DNA of 64,000 nucleotides from Chlorokybus atmophyticus (lineage: Eukaryota > Plantae > Mesostigma and Chlorokybus algae): NCBI GenBank assembly GCA_009103225.1, contig RHPI01003728.1, forward strand, positions 131,719 to 195,718. The letters are read 5' to 3'. Position 1 is the stretch's first letter. Every line of letters starts with the position of its first letter. The position numbers and the translations under genes are program-made. The notes under the pieces were generated by a model. It was not told the origin of the DNA, searched no databases, and was given only the letters and a program-made list of their open reading frames with translations. Shown here in pieces: positions 5,907-10,188 of this stretch.

Positions 5907-6755
5907 TGCCAACACAAAACCACATGTCTCAGGCAACACCTGGCTCCCCACATGACTTGGAATAATATGTTCACAGCGCATGCTCACTGAAACACTTAGC
6001 AACATTGACAGCACACAACAACCAGTCCAACATGCAAACTGTGAGCTATCGCATTGCAATCATGGCCTGTGACAATCTCTGCAAGTCTAGCAGACAACGC
6101 ACCCTGGTGTAAGCGCGAGATGCGTCGTACTGAGCATATCCATGCTGGGCATGCAGTTACCTGCAGTACAAGCTTGACACACAGACGAGTCAGTACGCAC
6201 AGCAACAACACCGTGTAACACGACAACCAAGCTACACCACCAAGCTTGCAAGAAAACTGCCAAATCAGACACTTGCAGTACGTGCGTCTCGCTTTCACAA
6301 AAACCGTTGCGAAAGTGCATTCACAAGACATAGCAACTGCACTGGGGCAATGTCTGAGGTTGACGACGTGCACGCATGAAGAACAGCAGCTTATCATTGT
6401 ATAATAGCTCTGTGTGCCTACACGTTATGTGTATACGCATTAACCAAGCTCCGTACCGCGGCTACCACGCCAGGCCAATGCAGCCCTCAGCCCGTCGCCA
6501 GCTTGAAGCCCGCCGCAGTAAGCAAGGCAGCCGGCACCTTTCACAAAAGCGAACCAAACCACAGCGAGCCAAGAGAATCAAACTGAGCTTAGTACCGCCT
6601 CACTCAATACTGTAAAGCGCCCAGCAGACAACCCTTCCCTGCTCCCGTCCAAACCCCTTCTCCTTCTCACCGTCCTCCACCTCCTCCCGCTCGTCCTCTT
6701 CGTCCTCCCAACTCTTGTCGCCTCCGCCGCCGCCGCCCCAACCTCAACCAGCAGC

Positions 6756-6763
6756 TAGGGTTT
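6756..6763 (-). promoter_or_regulatory. Telo-box (AAACCCTA) in the divergent promoter/5'UTR between the DCX gene and COX23
   Basis: TAGGGTTT on + strand next to (CCG)n/(GGC)n leader tracts. Similar motifs near 19892, 25146, 42027 and 61935. Confidence 0.55.
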
Positions 6764-6907
6764 CAAACTAGTACAAGGCGGGAAAAGCTAACCACACTGT
6801 AACGGTTCCAAGCTGTGACTCAGCCTGTGAGTCGCCAGCCAGGGTTCTGTCTCAGGTGCTGGTCAGCTGGCGGCGGCGGCGGCGGCGGCGGAAGTGGTGG
6901 CGGCGTC

Positions 6908-7554
6908 ATGCAGCAGCAGGACGTCGGGGCAAAGCACGGCGGTTTCAAGAAGGTGTCCGAGTCGTACTGCCAGGAGTTCACCGCGGCCTCCCTCAAGTGT
7001 ACGAGCGTGTTGCGTCCATGCAGCGGAGCAACTGAGCGGCTGCTTGCTTGGCTGGCATGCATTCGGTGTGACTGCGGGACGTTATCAGTAGTCAGCTGAT
7101 TGTGGTGATGCTGTACATGACGGTTTAACAGGCTGGAGATCGCTTGAGCATGCATGCTGTGTGACTGCGAGACTTGAGAACGCGATTTGCATGTCGCGTG
7201 CCTGTGAGATGTCAATGCATGTCATCTGGCATGCATGGGATTGTACCACTGGTCGTGGTCAATCATAAGTGCAACTTGACAGCCAAACAGTGTGCTTCGC
7301 GCTACAGGTTTGGACGACAACGCTTACGACGGCAGCAAGTGTCAGAAGGAGTTTGACAATTACAAACAGTGCAGAAAGCGTGAGGTGAGTACCCAGAGTT
7401 GACCGTGCTGAACGCAAACTGTGTTGTGCACATTGACTATGTATAGATCAGTCGTTGTTGCTTGGGAAATTTGGTTATTTACTCACCTCGTGTGCTTCTT
7501 GGAATGTAGAAGCAAGCACGGTTGGAGGCAAGGCGAGCTGGTGTGAAGTGGTGA
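6908..7554 (+). CDS. COX23: Cytochrome c oxidase assembly factor COX23/CHCHD7-like twin-Cx9C protein, 70 aa; exons 6908-6998, 7308-7384, 7510-7554
   Basis: Spliced product MQQQDVGAKHGGFKKVSESYCQEFTAASLKCLDDNAYDGSKCQKEFDNYKQCRKREKQARLEARRAGVKW*. Twin Cx9C spacing; C-terminus resembles plant COX23 (KKEREARLE). Canonical GT-AG sites. Confidence 0.88.
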
Positions 7555-7592
7555 CACAGCAGTTCACACTTGAACAGTACGCGCACATAGAG

Positions 7593-7931
7593 ATGAGTTT
7601 GCGTGACGAGAAGGAGAAGAGCCAAGCTAACACTTGGTGGGAGGATGTGGTGGACGGCATTTTCAGCAAAGGTTGCAATCGGCCGACGCTGTTCGCGCTG
7701 AATTGCACTCTTCTACTGCTGTTTGTGGCCGTCTCTGCTCTTGCATTTGTTACGCAAAACCTATACGGCTACGGCTTTGCTGCGCTGCACGCGGGCGTGC
7801 TGTTGATTCTGGCGGTGATTGTGTTATTTTTGGTCAACTGGTACGTTGACGCAGCGGGGATACTGGTCGATAGCAACAACAATAAGCCTGTAGAGTTGCA
7901 AGAGACTTCAACTAAGGCCAAGGCTTCGTGA
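7593..7931 (+). CDS. PKR1: PKR1-like ER membrane protein (V-ATPase assembly factor family), intronless, 112 aa
   Basis: WWEDVVDGIFSKGCNRPTLFALNCTLLLLF...VTQN...LHAGVLLILAVIVLFLVNWYV fits the remembered Pkr1 pattern (W.SIF.PG..P.L..A.N..F..L; H...L..L...+NWF+); two TM segments and a charged tail. Confidence 0.7.
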   Translation: MSLRDEKEKSQANTWWEDVVDGIFSKGCNRPTLFALNCTLLLLFVAVSALAFVTQNLYGYGFAALHAGVLLILAVIVLFLVNWYVDAAGILVDSNNNKPVELQETSTKAKAS

Positions 7932-9500
7932 TGGTGCTGCGGCGGTTTCTGCGAGCGGTTGGGCAGGCGCGACTGTTGCAGAGGTATCACGCAAATCTCT
8001 CATTTCCAGCTGTCGTGGAAGCTGCTGCGCACTTGCATAAGGCCGTCAACAAGAGTCCAGCGCAGACACGCATTGCCGTGGCTATCTCGGGTGGTGTCGA
8101 TTCGTCAGTTGCGGCTCTACTTTTCAAGCAACAGGTGATGGAAGCTACATTATATCAATCAGCATGCTGTTTGTTCGCGGATCACCCCAACACTTTGTGG
8201 GTGTTCGGGTTCTCTTGCTTGCTGTGAGGCTGAATCAAGGGGTCGACTGCAGGGTTACAATGTGTTTGGTGTGCACATGCGCAACTGGGATGAGAGCGAG
8301 GAGCGCGGGAGTGCCTGCCTGGGGGAGAAGGAGTATGCGGACGCGCAGCGCGTGTGCGAGCAGCTGCAGATGCCGCTGCACCACGTCTCCTTTGTGCGAC
8401 AGTATTGGCATCACGTGTTTGAGGACTTTTTGAATGGCCACGCACGTGGGGTCACACCCAACCCGGACCTTGCGTGCAACCGCCACATCAAGTTTGATGC
8501 ATTGCTACAGCATGCTCTGACTCTCGGGGCAGATGCTTTGGCTACCGGCCACTACGCGCGGTTGCGAATGAACAACAGCAACAACACCGTCTCGCTCATA
8601 CCTGCCTTGGACGCCTCCAAAGACCAGACATATTTCTTAGCAACAGTGCGACAATCAGCGCTACAGAAGGCTGCCTTTCCTCTTGGAGGTTTGCATAAGG
8701 CAGAAGTGAGGGCTATTGCCAAGGCGGCCGGGCTGCCAACAGCAGAGAAGCGCAGCAGCGTCGGCATCTGCTTTATCGGCAAGCGCGACTTTGCCGATTT
8801 CATTGGTGACTATGTTGACATGAAACCTGGCCGCTTTGTGTCTGTTAGCGGGCAAGACCTCGGCGCCCACAAAGGCCTGGCCGCTTACACTTGTGGACAG
8901 CGAGCTCGTATTGGTGGCGCACCACATGCATGGTATGGGCATGTTGTTTTGTAGTTCGCATATGTGCCTAACGCATATTACCTGCAAATATGGCTTGCAT
9001 GAGGACCATTATTGATGATGCTGTAACTCAGGTATGTCGCTGGAAAGGACCCTGCTATCAATGTAGTGTATCTGGCGCCTGGAGGAGAAGACGCGGCACT
9101 GTACAGCACGGCTGCAGTTACCGAGGAGTTCACTTGGATGGCTGGCCATCCGCCTGCAACCCTGCCAGTACAGCCCGGGTGGGCATACAAGTGCAAAGTT
9201 CGCTACTCGGAGAACTTTGTCAACTGCTCAATAGTGCGCCTTGGGGCAAGCCCAGATAGCACCTTATGTGATGGCGTATTGGCTTCAAGCACATTCTCCG
9301 GGTATAATGCGCGCACGGTGATTGACTTCGCTGGCTCATTAGGTGTACTGTTTGAAAGACCGGTTAGAGGTGTCACGCCAGGACAAGCCTTGGTTTTGTA
9401 TGCCAGTGATGGTGCTTGCCTTGGCTCAGCACCGATTCGCTACCAATGCAGGACTCTGCATGAGCAGAACGGCACCTTGGTCATGGCTAGCGCAGTTTAG
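7931..9500 (+). CDS. mnmA: tRNA 2-thiouridylase MnmA/TRMU with organellar presequence; exons 7931-8134, 8253-8932, 9035-9500
   Basis: PP-loop SGGVDSSVAA, MRNWD, TPNPDLACNRHIKF, ATGHYAR, KDQTYFL, SVGICFIGKR, YTCGQR, GVTPGQ. Arg-rich N-terminus MVLRRFLRAV. Confidence 0.95.
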
Positions 9501-9624
9501 GGATAGTTGTAGTCAGTTCTAGGCGTCTCTCTCTTGAGTTGTTTGGCTACTGGTTGATTAAATTAGTTTCAGATTGCTTTCAGCTTTCATCGCTCCGTGT
9601 GAGTCATACAGCAAGGATTCTCAG

Positions 9625-9669
9625 CACAACCCGCTGCACTGAAGGTGCAGCGGGTTGTGTTGCTTCTAA
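9625..9669 (+). mobile_element. Helitron-type 3' terminus remnant (15-bp perfect hairpin, then CTAA ending 10 nt downstream)
   Basis: CACAACCCGCTGCAC-TGAAG-GTGCAGCGGGTTGTG then TTGCTTCTAA; shares CAGCACAAC...GTTGTGTTGC with the hairpin at 36234. Confidence 0.45.
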
Positions 9670-10188
9670 CTGACAGAGACATGACATTTCACTTAGGTTT
9701 GAGGACGATACTCATCAGCTGGCTCTGCTGTAATGATGTTCACGCTGTGCACATGGCATGTGGGCATGATACAGCCACACCTGCTAGAAAAGCCTAGGCG
9801 CTTAATGGACCATCCAGCCATGTTGTCTGATTTGCTTTCAAAGGGTGTGTAGGAAAATAGTGTTGTGCACTTCAGTAGCAGCCTCCTGCACTGCAAGCGC
9901 GCACACATATTCAACTGCCTATCACTAAGCAACCCACCTATTAAACTGTCACCACTGCTATACAGCTACTGTACAAGTAATATACAACTTTATGCCTGCA
10001 GCCAGTATGAGATGACAAAACTGGAACAAAAAGAGCACCCCTGCGCGCCATGAGCCGTTGGCAACCACAGTTGCTTACCCACGCATACGCGACCTCACTT
10101 CTGGCTCTGCACACAAAAGCACAATGTTGTCAGCTCATATTCCCACATCTGATGAGTTGTATCTCATCAAACACACACCAACGACGCA

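What the first reader, a model, noticed from the sequence alone, without database searches (positions are those of the whole stretch)
6908..9500. Candidate tricistronic nuclear locus COX23 - PKR1-like - mnmA
Seen: three recognisable, unrelated ORFs on one strand. The COX23 stop is 38 nt before the PKR1 ATG, and the PKR1 stop overlaps the mnmA ATG. This leaves no room for a 3'UTR, poly(A) site and promoter between them; the only leader-like sequence is upstream of COX23. Known: polycistronic nuclear mRNAs are documented in chlorophyte green algae, mostly bicistronic with short upstream ORFs. Inference: one mRNA makes a mitochondrial IMS protein, an ER membrane protein and an organellar tRNA thiolase. 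A three-ORF unit in a probable streptophyte alga would extend the phenomenon.
Basis: partly seen in the sequence, partly recalled or inferred. Interest (0 to 1): 0.88.

Follow-up and report, generated by a model that had tools for sequence, protein, structure and literature searches.

The report
Three-gene messenger RNA in a green alga
Three unrelated, conserved genes (a mitochondrial COX23/CHCHD7-like protein, an ER Pkr1-like membrane protein and the organellar tRNA thiolase MnmA/MTU1) lie head to tail and sit together on one spliced RNA contig, a new example of the polycistronic nuclear genes already known from green algae, probably in the early streptophyte Chlorokybus.

Summary
COX23-like CDS: 6908-6998, 7308-7384, 7510-7554. 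Pkr1-like ORF: 7593-7931, 38 nt after it. MnmA CDS: 7931-8134, 8253-8932, 9032-9500, its ATG overlapping the Pkr1 stop (TGATG). All three have family support: CHCH domain with human CHCHD7 as best solved match, Pfam Pkr1 above threshold, MnmA at 1e-70.

RNA contigs from two independent studies bridge the ORFs with all four introns removed; one 2096-nt contig covers 6836-9582. No ATG lies in 6600-6907. The only AAUAAA-type hexamer in 6800-9900 is ATTAAA at 9557. The 661 nt before the MnmA ATG hold one ATG besides the two start codons (synonymous resampling P = 0.0055), the published signature of leaky scanning.

The Pkr1-to-MnmA pair recurs in five other algal or eukaryotic sequence sets. It probably matches a published Auxenochlorella bicistron whose first ORF is unannotated. 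COX23 upstream is seen only here.

Polycistrons of up to six ORFs are published for chlorophytes, so this is a new member of a known kind. The added value is a tricistron of three recognisable proteins, a deeply conserved pair, and a probable streptophyte host. Single-molecule transcripts and translation remain untested. The scan holds 49 first-reader notes naming polycistronic or bicistronic loci elsewhere in this genome.

The parts
6456..6738 (-). First, non-coding exon of the divergent upstream gene. It bounds the unit on the 5' side.
   Evidence: The X1 contig covers 6457-6738 and then joins to an exon ending at 6172. The intron 6173-6455 reads GT..AG on the minus strand.
6739..6835 (.). 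Gap of about 97 bp between the two divergent RNA contigs; inferred bidirectional promoter.
   Evidence: No contig covers it. It holds no ATG.
6836..6907 (+). 5' leader of at least 72 nt, without ATG, containing a (GGC)n run.
   Evidence: The X1 contig starts at 6836. No ATG lies in 6600-6907.
6908..7554 (+). ORF 1: COX23/CHCHD7-like twin-Cx9C protein, 70 aa. Exons 6908-6998, 7308-7384, 7510-7554; introns 6999-7307 and 7385-7509.
   Evidence: Pfam CHCH 1.8e-9; best solved match is human CHCHD7 (2lqt) at 4.2e-6. No internal ATG in any frame.
7555..7592 (+). 38-nt spacer between ORF 1 and ORF 2, with no ATG and no poly(A) hexamer.
7593..7931 (+). ORF 2: Pkr1-like ER membrane protein, 112 aa, intronless, with two hydrophobic segments and a C-terminal KxKxx.
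   Evidence: Pfam PF08636 30.6 bits, above the gathering score of 27.7. 23 homologues found, and 17 of the 20 aligned sequences (window ORF included) hit Pkr1. Nearest Atlas clusters are Pkr1. Hydropathy.
7645..7701 (+). The only extra ATG upstream of MnmA: out of frame, opening an 18-codon mini-ORF.
7931..9500 (+). ORF 3: MnmA/MTU1 tRNA 2-thiouridylase, 450 aa. Exons 7931-8134, 8253-8932, 9032-9500; introns 8135-8252 and 8933-9031. The N-terminus is basic and presequence-like.
   Evidence: solved MnmA chains at 1e-70. First 47 residues hold 8 R+K and 1 D+E.
9501..9632 (+). 3' UTR. ATTAAA at 9557-9562 is the only AAUAAA-type hexamer in 6800-9900. RNA contigs end at 9582 (X1) and 9632 (X2).

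Best explanation
This is a single nuclear transcription unit. It starts near 6836 from a short bidirectional promoter and is polyadenylated about 25 nt after the ATTAAA at 9557. Four introns are removed, giving an mRNA of about 2.1 kb that carries three separate cistrons in three reading frames.

The three products are:
- a COX23/CHCHD7-like protein of the mitochondrial intermembrane space;
- a Pkr1-like ER membrane protein, by homology a V-ATPase assembly factor;
- the organellar, probably mitochondrial, tRNA 2-thiouridylase MnmA/MTU1.

The most likely way all three are translated is leaky scanning from the cap. Some scanning 40S subunits pass the COX23 AUG and the Pkr1 AUG, both of which have G at -3 but lack G at +4. 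They then start at the MnmA AUG, which has G at -3 and G at +4. The path is kept almost free of other AUGs. This predicts graded output: COX23 highest, then Pkr1, then MnmA. Reinitiation at the UGAUG overlap may add to MnmA synthesis.

Shown here: the ORFs, their families, the spliced RNA contigs bridging them, the AUG census, and the conservation of the Pkr1-MnmA pair. Inferred: that one molecule carries all three, the cap and poly(A) sites, translation of each ORF, and the scanning mechanism.
For: - RNA contigs: one spliced contig covers 6836-9582 in X1, and a second study's contig covers 6920-8346. No contig covers the intron interiors or 6739-6835.
- The bridging exon 7510-8134 is held at 1.00 and 0.89 of its sampled words in two RNA runs.
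- There is no ATG in 6600-6907. The single ATTAAA at 9557 is 25 nt before a contig end. No AATAAA or ATTAAA lies between the ORFs.
- Only three ATGs lie in the 661 nt before the MnmA ATG. Dinucleotide shuffles give a mean of 6.4.
- Out-of-frame ATGs in COX23 plus Pkr1: 1 observed against 6.5 expected under synonymous resampling, P = 0.0055. The MnmA CDS shows no depletion, 19 against 11.4.
- Neither upstream protein has an internal Met.
- MnmA has no other in-frame ATG before its PP-loop motif, and it carries its own basic N-terminus.
- Pkr1-like then MnmA on one strand recurs in the RNA contigs L001-L007 (6-nt spacer), the transcripts L013 (76 nt) and L015 (17-nt overlap), and the genomic contigs L016/L017 and L018.
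- Published work: chlorophyte polycistrons of up to six ORFs (PMC7896298). Leaky scanning with AUG depletion and short 5' UTRs, and an Auxenochlorella bicistron of a 291-nt ER/TM ORF plus MnmA with a 71-nt 5' UTR, a 42-nt spacer and no extra AUG (PMC11892635).
Against: - Logan contigs are assemblies, and the tool itself warns that a contig across two genes shows no single transcript. Contigs drop rare variants and have flat depth, so minor internal start sites or early poly(A) sites cannot be excluded.
- No long reads, cap mapping, ribosome profiling or peptides were available.
- The whole-region dinucleotide-shuffle test for AUG depletion is only borderline (P = 0.056).
- One out-of-frame AUG, with A at -3, remains at 7645.
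- All three start codons have G at -3, so the Kozak gradient rests on the +4 position alone. No consensus for this genome was derived.
Confidence: 0.72

Rival explanations
1. The transcripts overlap but are independent. A COX23 mRNA and a separate Pkr1-MnmA (or MnmA-only) mRNA start from an internal site in COX23 intron 2, in exon 3 or in the Pkr1 ORF. Short-read assembly then merged them into one contig.
For: Contigs cannot prove single molecules (tool note). In the other organisms only the Pkr1-MnmA pair is seen, without COX23, so a bicistronic core transcript is conceivable here too.
Against: - The spliced junction 7384|7510 lies only 83 nt before the Pkr1 ATG, and it sits on the same unbranched contig in two studies.
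- No intron sequence is covered by any contig.
- No poly(A) hexamer follows COX23 or Pkr1.
- COX23 itself is devoid of out-of-frame and internal ATGs (0 against 3.0 expected, P = 0.03). That is expected only if downstream cistrons are read by ribosomes that scan through it.
Confidence: 0.12
2. There is one tricistronic mRNA, but MnmA is made mainly by termination-reinitiation at the UGAUG stop-start overlap after Pkr1 is translated, not by leaky scanning.
For: The stop and start overlap by one base. In L015 the MnmA ATG lies 17 nt inside the Pkr1 ORF, and in L001 it lies 6 nt after it, so tight coupling recurs. PMC11892635 does not fully exclude reinitiation. Stop-start overlaps drive reinitiation in some RNA viruses (own knowledge).
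Against: - The Pkr1 ORF is 112 codons long. Eukaryotic reinitiation is normally efficient only after short ORFs (established knowledge).
- The spacer is 76 nt in L013 and 42 nt in Auxenochlorella, so the overlap is not conserved.
- AUG depletion extends over COX23, far from the overlap.
- In vivo tests in Auxenochlorella favoured leaky scanning.
Confidence: 0.15
3. Only MnmA, and perhaps COX23, is a functional product. The Pkr1-like ORF acts as a long regulatory upstream ORF, or is a decaying relic that is not made as a stable protein.
For: The exact Pkr1 sequence is absent from a 15-billion-protein collection, and word searches found nothing. Its Pfam score is only just above threshold. Re-curation of Chlamydomonas loci showed that some middle ORFs of reported tricistrons are not real genes.
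Against: - The ORF keeps the family's invariant G, N and T and most of its nearly invariant residues, two hydrophobic helices and a KxKxx end.
- 17 of the 20 aligned sequences (window ORF included) hit Pfam Pkr1, and the nearest Atlas clusters are Pkr1.
- The same protein precedes MnmA in distant organisms at only 25-40% identity, which implies purifying selection on the protein.
- Chlamydomonas Pkr1 is ORF 1 of a bicistron kept in the high-confidence, re-curated set.
Confidence: 0.08

Closest known systems
Auxenochlorella protothecoides bicistron UTEX250_A02.02855.1 / UTEX250_A02.02850.1 (Duenas et al. 2025, PMC11892635, Datasets S1-S5)
   Same: A small upstream ORF (291 nt, predicted ER, signal peptide/TM) is followed on one transcript by MnmA tRNA 2-thiouridylase, predicted mitochondrial. 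The 5' UTR is 71 nt (72 nt here), the spacer is 42 nt, and there is no extra AUG upstream of ORF 2.
   Different: It has two ORFs, not three, and no COX23. ORF 1 is unannotated there, and its homology to Pkr1 is inferred here from length and predicted location only. The stop and start do not overlap. The host is a trebouxiophyte chlorophyte.
Chlamydomonas reinhardtii bicistron Cre03.g152505 (Pkr1) / Cre03.g152500 (SET-domain protein)
   Same: Pkr1 is the upstream cistron of an obligatory polycistronic transcript kept in the high-confidence set, with few AUGs before ORF 2.
   Different: The downstream partner is a SET-domain methyltransferase, not MnmA, and there is no third ORF.
Chlorophyte polycistronic loci in general (Gallaher et al. 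2021, PMC7896298)
   Same: Two to six ORFs sit on one capped mRNA with short inter-ORF distances. The upstream proteins are small and often serve mitochondrial assembly, for example TOM22-SDHAF3, LYR proteins, and the COA4, COA6 and cysteine-alpha-hairpin proteins of the Auxenochlorella list.
   Different: Those loci were validated by Iso-Seq, and translation was tested by proteomics and in vitro for part of the set. Here only short-read contigs exist. The host is probably a streptophyte, and the apparent poly(A) signal is ATTAAA-type rather than UGUAA.
CDC26-TTM3 bicistron of land plants and green algae (cited in PMC11892635)
   Same: [quoted passage not shown] That is the depth the Pkr1-MnmA pair would reach if the host is Chlorokybus.
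   Different: The genes are different. Conservation of Pkr1-MnmA in land plants was not tested here.

Membership tests
Green-algal exclusively polycistronic nuclear locus (sense of Gallaher 2021 / Duenas 2025) | Two or more ORFs on the same single RNA molecule (long reads) | tested here: inconclusive
   Spliced short-read contigs bridge all three ORFs in two studies. No long-read data could be laid.
Green-algal exclusively polycistronic nuclear locus (sense of Gallaher 2021 / Duenas 2025) | No monocistronic transcripts of the member genes | not testable with these tools
   Contigs drop minor variants. Only indirect support exists: no internal poly(A) hexamer and no intron coverage.
Green-algal exclusively polycistronic nuclear locus (sense of Gallaher 2021 / Duenas 2025) | Short inter-ORF distance, short 5' UTR, and few AUGs upstream of the downstream ORFs | tested here: met
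   Spacers of 38 nt and -1 nt. Leader of at least 72 nt without ATG. One extra ATG in 661 nt, P = 0.0055 by synonymous resampling.
Green-algal exclusively polycistronic nuclear locus (sense of Gallaher 2021 / Duenas 2025) | Each ORF translated into a separate protein | not testable with these tools
   Support is indirect: three different reading frames, an in-frame stop at 7847-7849 ahead of the MnmA ATG, a separate presequence-like N-terminus, and conserved proteins.
COX23 / CHCHD7 (twin Cx9C proteins of the mitochondrial intermembrane space) | Twin Cx9C (CHCH) domain, with best similarity to CHCHD7 rather than other CHCH proteins | tested here: met
   Pfam CHCH 1.8e-9. The best solved match is human CHCHD7 (2lqt) at 4.2e-6; the next CHCH protein scores 0.021. 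The first motif's second Cys codon is formed across the exon 1/2 junction.
COX23 / CHCHD7 (twin Cx9C proteins of the mitochondrial intermembrane space) | Intermembrane-space location and a role in cytochrome oxidase assembly | not testable with these tools
   Inferred from homology only.
Pkr1 (PF08636, ER V-ATPase assembly factor) | Match to the family profile above the curated threshold | tested here: met
   30.6 bits against 27.7. 17 of the 20 aligned sequences (window ORF included) hit Pkr1, best 3.2e-17. Atlas top clusters are Pkr1 at 0.94-0.90.
Pkr1 (PF08636, ER V-ATPase assembly factor) | Small protein with two membrane-spanning helices and ER retention | tested here: met
   Hydrophobic windows lie within about residues 30-93, and the C-terminus is KAKAS (KxKxx). 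ER location itself was not tested.
Pkr1 (PF08636, ER V-ATPase assembly factor) | Function in V-ATPase assembly | not testable with these tools
   Known from yeast only (own knowledge); no solved structure was found.
MnmA / MTU1 tRNA 2-thiouridylase | HUP, PRC-barrel and C-terminal barrel domains, the PP-loop SGGxDS motif, and the conserved Cys-containing motifs | tested here: met
   PF03054 9.4e-76, PF20259 1.7e-14, PF20258 1.6e-11. SGGVDS is in exon 1. The NPD..CN..IKF and GICFIG motifs align to solved MnmA at 1e-70.

The most novel reading that the evidence does not exclude
The host is Chlorokybus, one of the streptophyte algae most distant from land plants. Obligate, chlorophyte-style polycistronic mRNAs read by leaky scanning therefore exist in Streptophyta. 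[quoted passage not shown] Chlorokybus later added COX23 to make a tricistron of three recognisable proteins. With the scan's many other candidate loci in this genome, polycistrony would be an ancestral and pervasive trait of green plants' algal relatives rather than a chlorophyte peculiarity.
Probability: 0.45. Interest if true: 0.65.

Novelty: new member of a known kind. Interest (0 to 1): 0.5.

Why it matters
Nuclear polycistronic mRNAs have been validated in chlorophytes. In streptophytes the papers read here name one bicistron, CDC26-TTM3.

This locus is a clean tricistron in which every cistron is a recognisable conserved protein. Re-curation in Chlamydomonas reclassified at least one reported tricistron as probably bicistronic, its middle ORF judged probably not a real gene.

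The locus also exposes a gene pair, Pkr1 then MnmA, that stays physically coupled across very distant algae. Pkr1 acts in the ER and MnmA probably in mitochondria. That suggests selection on co-expression or on a fixed expression ratio.

If the host is Chlorokybus, the origin of polycistrony in the green lineage becomes directly testable with existing cultures and long-read RNA sequencing.

In practice, the Pkr1 ORF's exact sequence is absent from the large public protein collection, and a word search found no copy of the COX23-like protein. Both small proteins are therefore probably missing from public gene sets, the usual annotation loss at such loci.

Tried and rejected
- Word-index homologue searches for the Pkr1 ORF and for COX23 found nothing. 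Exact look-ups of the Pkr1 ORF found nothing either.
- The exhaustive HMMER search was needed to find Pkr1 relatives.
- The Atlas search with MnmA exon 2 returned only bacterial clusters and no help on taxonomy.
- Rfam found no family in the window.
- Pfam on the window's long ORFs gave no good taxonomic marker. In that call the minus-strand references were trimmed at the wrong end, so it is not a fair test.
- Pkr1 relatives P0123 and P0125 have no MnmA downstream.
- MnmA relatives P0004, P0005 and P0006 show no Pkr1 upstream. Two of these had no DNA served, and one has an N gap upstream.
- tblastn of the COX23 protein against all fetched loci found no copy next to Pkr1 elsewhere.
- Stop-codon readthrough or a fusion protein is rejected. 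The three ORFs use three frames, and the MnmA frame has a stop at 7847-7849.
- Alternative splicing that joins the ORFs is rejected. Only the four GT..AG joints are seen.
- A chlorophyte-type UGUAA signal is not at the 3' end. The nearest TGTAA sites are at 9022, in an intron, and at 9729.
- The supplements of PMC7896298 are not held, so whether this pair is in its Dataset S4 could not be checked.
- The organism could not be named independently. Names are coded, and the genome's own proteins did not appear in the searches.
Full report
**Observation.** I rebuilt the three gene models from the sequence.
- ORF 1 is a 70-aa protein encoded by 6908-6998, 7308-7384 and 7510-7554, with TGA at 7552-7554.
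- ORF 2 is an intronless 112-aa ORF at 7593-7931, so the spacer is exactly 38 nt.
- ORF 3 is a 450-aa protein encoded by 7931-8134, 8253-8932 and 9032-9500. Its ATG shares one base with the ORF 2 stop (TGATG).
- In the shared exon 7510-8134 the three ORFs use three different reading frames. The ORF 3 frame has a stop at 7847-7849. Readthrough or a simple fusion is therefore excluded.

**What the ORFs are.**
- ORF 1 has a CHCH twin-Cx9C domain (Pfam 1.8e-9). Its best solved relative is human CHCHD7, the COX23 orthologue, at 4.2e-6; the next CHCH protein scores 0.021.
- ORF 2 passes the Pfam Pkr1 gathering score, 30.6 against 27.7 bits. An exhaustive HMMER search of 1.8 billion representatives found 23 relatives.
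- In an alignment of 20 sequences (the window's ORF, 18 small relatives and the L001 ORF), 17 hit Pfam Pkr1 and G27, N29 and T32 are invariant.
- The ORF 2 protein has hydrophobic windows within about residues 30-93 and ends in KAKAS, a KxKxx motif. Its nearest Atlas clusters are Pkr1 clusters dominated by Streptophyta.
- ORF 3 is MnmA/MTU1, with all three domains and 1e-70 to solved MnmA, the conserved Cys motifs aligned. Its N-terminus is basic and presequence-like, with 8 R+K and 1 D+E in 47 residues.

**Transcript evidence.**
- Two RNA runs from different studies hold about 63% of the words of 6700-9700, about what the spliced exons would give.
- In X1 a single 2096-nt contig covers 6836-9582 with exactly the four predicted GT..AG introns removed.
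- In X2 an 882-nt contig runs from COX23 exon 1 through Pkr1 into MnmA exon 2.
- No contig covers the intron interiors. The bridging exon is held at 1.00 (X2) and 0.89 (X1) of its sampled words.
- Upstream, another contig covers 6457-6738 and splices to an exon ending at 6172. The intron reads GT..AG on the minus strand. This is a divergent gene, which leaves about 97 bp (6739-6835) for a bidirectional promoter.
- No ATG lies in 6600-6907.
- The only AAUAAA-type hexamer in 6800-9900 is ATTAAA at 9557, 25 nt before the X1 contig end. None lies between the ORFs.
- Contigs are not single molecules, so this is strong but not final evidence for one mRNA.

**Signature of the mechanism.**
- The 661 nt of mature RNA before the MnmA ATG contain only three ATGs. 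Two are the start codons. The third is an out-of-frame ATG at 7645, which opens an 18-codon ORF.
- Dinucleotide shuffles give a mean of 6.4 ATGs, P = 0.056.
- I resampled codons while keeping the proteins fixed. Out-of-frame ATGs in COX23 plus Pkr1 number 1 against 6.5 expected (P = 0.0055). The MnmA CDS has 19 against 11.4.
- Neither upstream protein has an internal Met.
- All three start codons have G at -3, and only MnmA has G at +4.
- These are the features that Duenas et al. 2025 tie to leaky scanning: a short 5' UTR, weak upstream context and a dearth of AUGs upstream of ORF 2. Their in vivo tests favoured leaky scanning over reinitiation.
- The UGAUG overlap leaves room for some reinitiation.

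**Conservation.** The Pkr1-to-MnmA order on one strand recurs widely.

| Sequence set | Type | Spacing |
|---|---|---|
| L001-L007 | RNA contigs of a very GC-rich alga | 6-nt spacer; no ATG between the two starts |
| L013 | MMETSP transcript | 76-nt spacer |
| L015 | JGI transcript; closest MnmA, 59% identity | MnmA ATG 17 nt inside the Pkr1 ORF |
| L016, L017 | metagenome contigs | not resolved |
| L018 | 27-kb genomic contig | not resolved |

- In the literature, Auxenochlorella has a high-confidence bicistron of a 291-nt unannotated ER/TM ORF followed by mitochondrial MnmA. It has a 71-nt 5' UTR, a 42-nt spacer and no extra AUG.
- Chlamydomonas Pkr1 is ORF 1 of another obligate bicistron (PMC11892635 datasets).
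- COX23 upstream of Pkr1 was found nowhere else. Small CHCH, COA4 and COA6 proteins are, however, typical members of algal bicistrons.

**Organism.**
- Names are coded, so I could not identify the organism directly.
- Earlier follow-up notes of this scan call the genome Chlorokybus.
- The run pattern fits Irisarri et al. 2021 (PMC8611356). A 2013 multi-species study holds the sequence with no differences. A 2021 study under one organism label holds one near-identical and two diverged data sets.
- The ATTAAA-type 3' signal and the Streptophyta-dominated Pkr1 neighbours agree weakly.
- I treat the streptophyte assignment as probable, not shown.

**Comparison and verdict.**
- Polycistronic nuclear mRNAs with up to six ORFs are published for chlorophytes (PMC7896298). 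[quoted passage not shown] The kind is therefore known.
- Three things are new here. It is a tricistron made of three recognisable proteins. The Pkr1-MnmA pair is recognised as a deeply conserved coupled pair; no paper in the library mentions Pkr1 together with bicistronic. And the host is probably a streptophyte alga, for which I found no report of nuclear polycistrons.
- The scan holds 49 first-reader notes naming polycistronic or bicistronic loci elsewhere in this genome. I did not test them.
- My confidence that one spliced mRNA carries all three ORFs is about 0.88. My confidence that all three are translated, chiefly by leaky scanning, is about 0.7.

Noticed in passing
window 6456-6738 (-), intron 6173-6455: The divergent upstream gene has a 283-nt first exon with no ATG on its own strand. 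Its 5' end lies only about 97 bp from the start of the tricistronic contig, a compact bidirectional promoter. I read the absence of ATG by eye, not with a tool.
   Followed up: partly
window 7996 and 8039: Run X1 differs from the window at two places in MnmA exon 1. T7996C is synonymous (Asn22). A8039G changes Lys37 to Glu in the presequence-like region. Run X2 has no differences. This looks like strain polymorphism, not editing.
   Followed up: partly
P0121 (2507 aa) and P0122 (1627 aa), hits: Two very long predicted proteins contain 10 and 6 Pkr1-like stretches. They are either odd tandem-repeat proteins or run-on gene calls over tandem Pkr1 copies.
   Followed up: no
L003 1-24 and its last 26 bases: This Logan RNA contig carries sequencing-adapter sequence at both ends. 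The insert starts at the position matching L001:166, 26 nt before the Pkr1-like ATG. That may mark the transcript's 5' end in that alga.
   Followed up: no
L001 1-144 (-) and 1767-2000 (-): The GC-rich alga's 2-kb RNA contig also holds ORFs on the opposite strand at both ends. The neighbouring genes are therefore extremely close, or their transcripts overlap.
   Followed up: no
window 6864-6890: A (GGC)n run of about eight units sits in the 5' leader, 20 nt before the COX23 ATG. It breaks read placement in the contigs (tool note) and could form structure that affects scanning.
   Followed up: no
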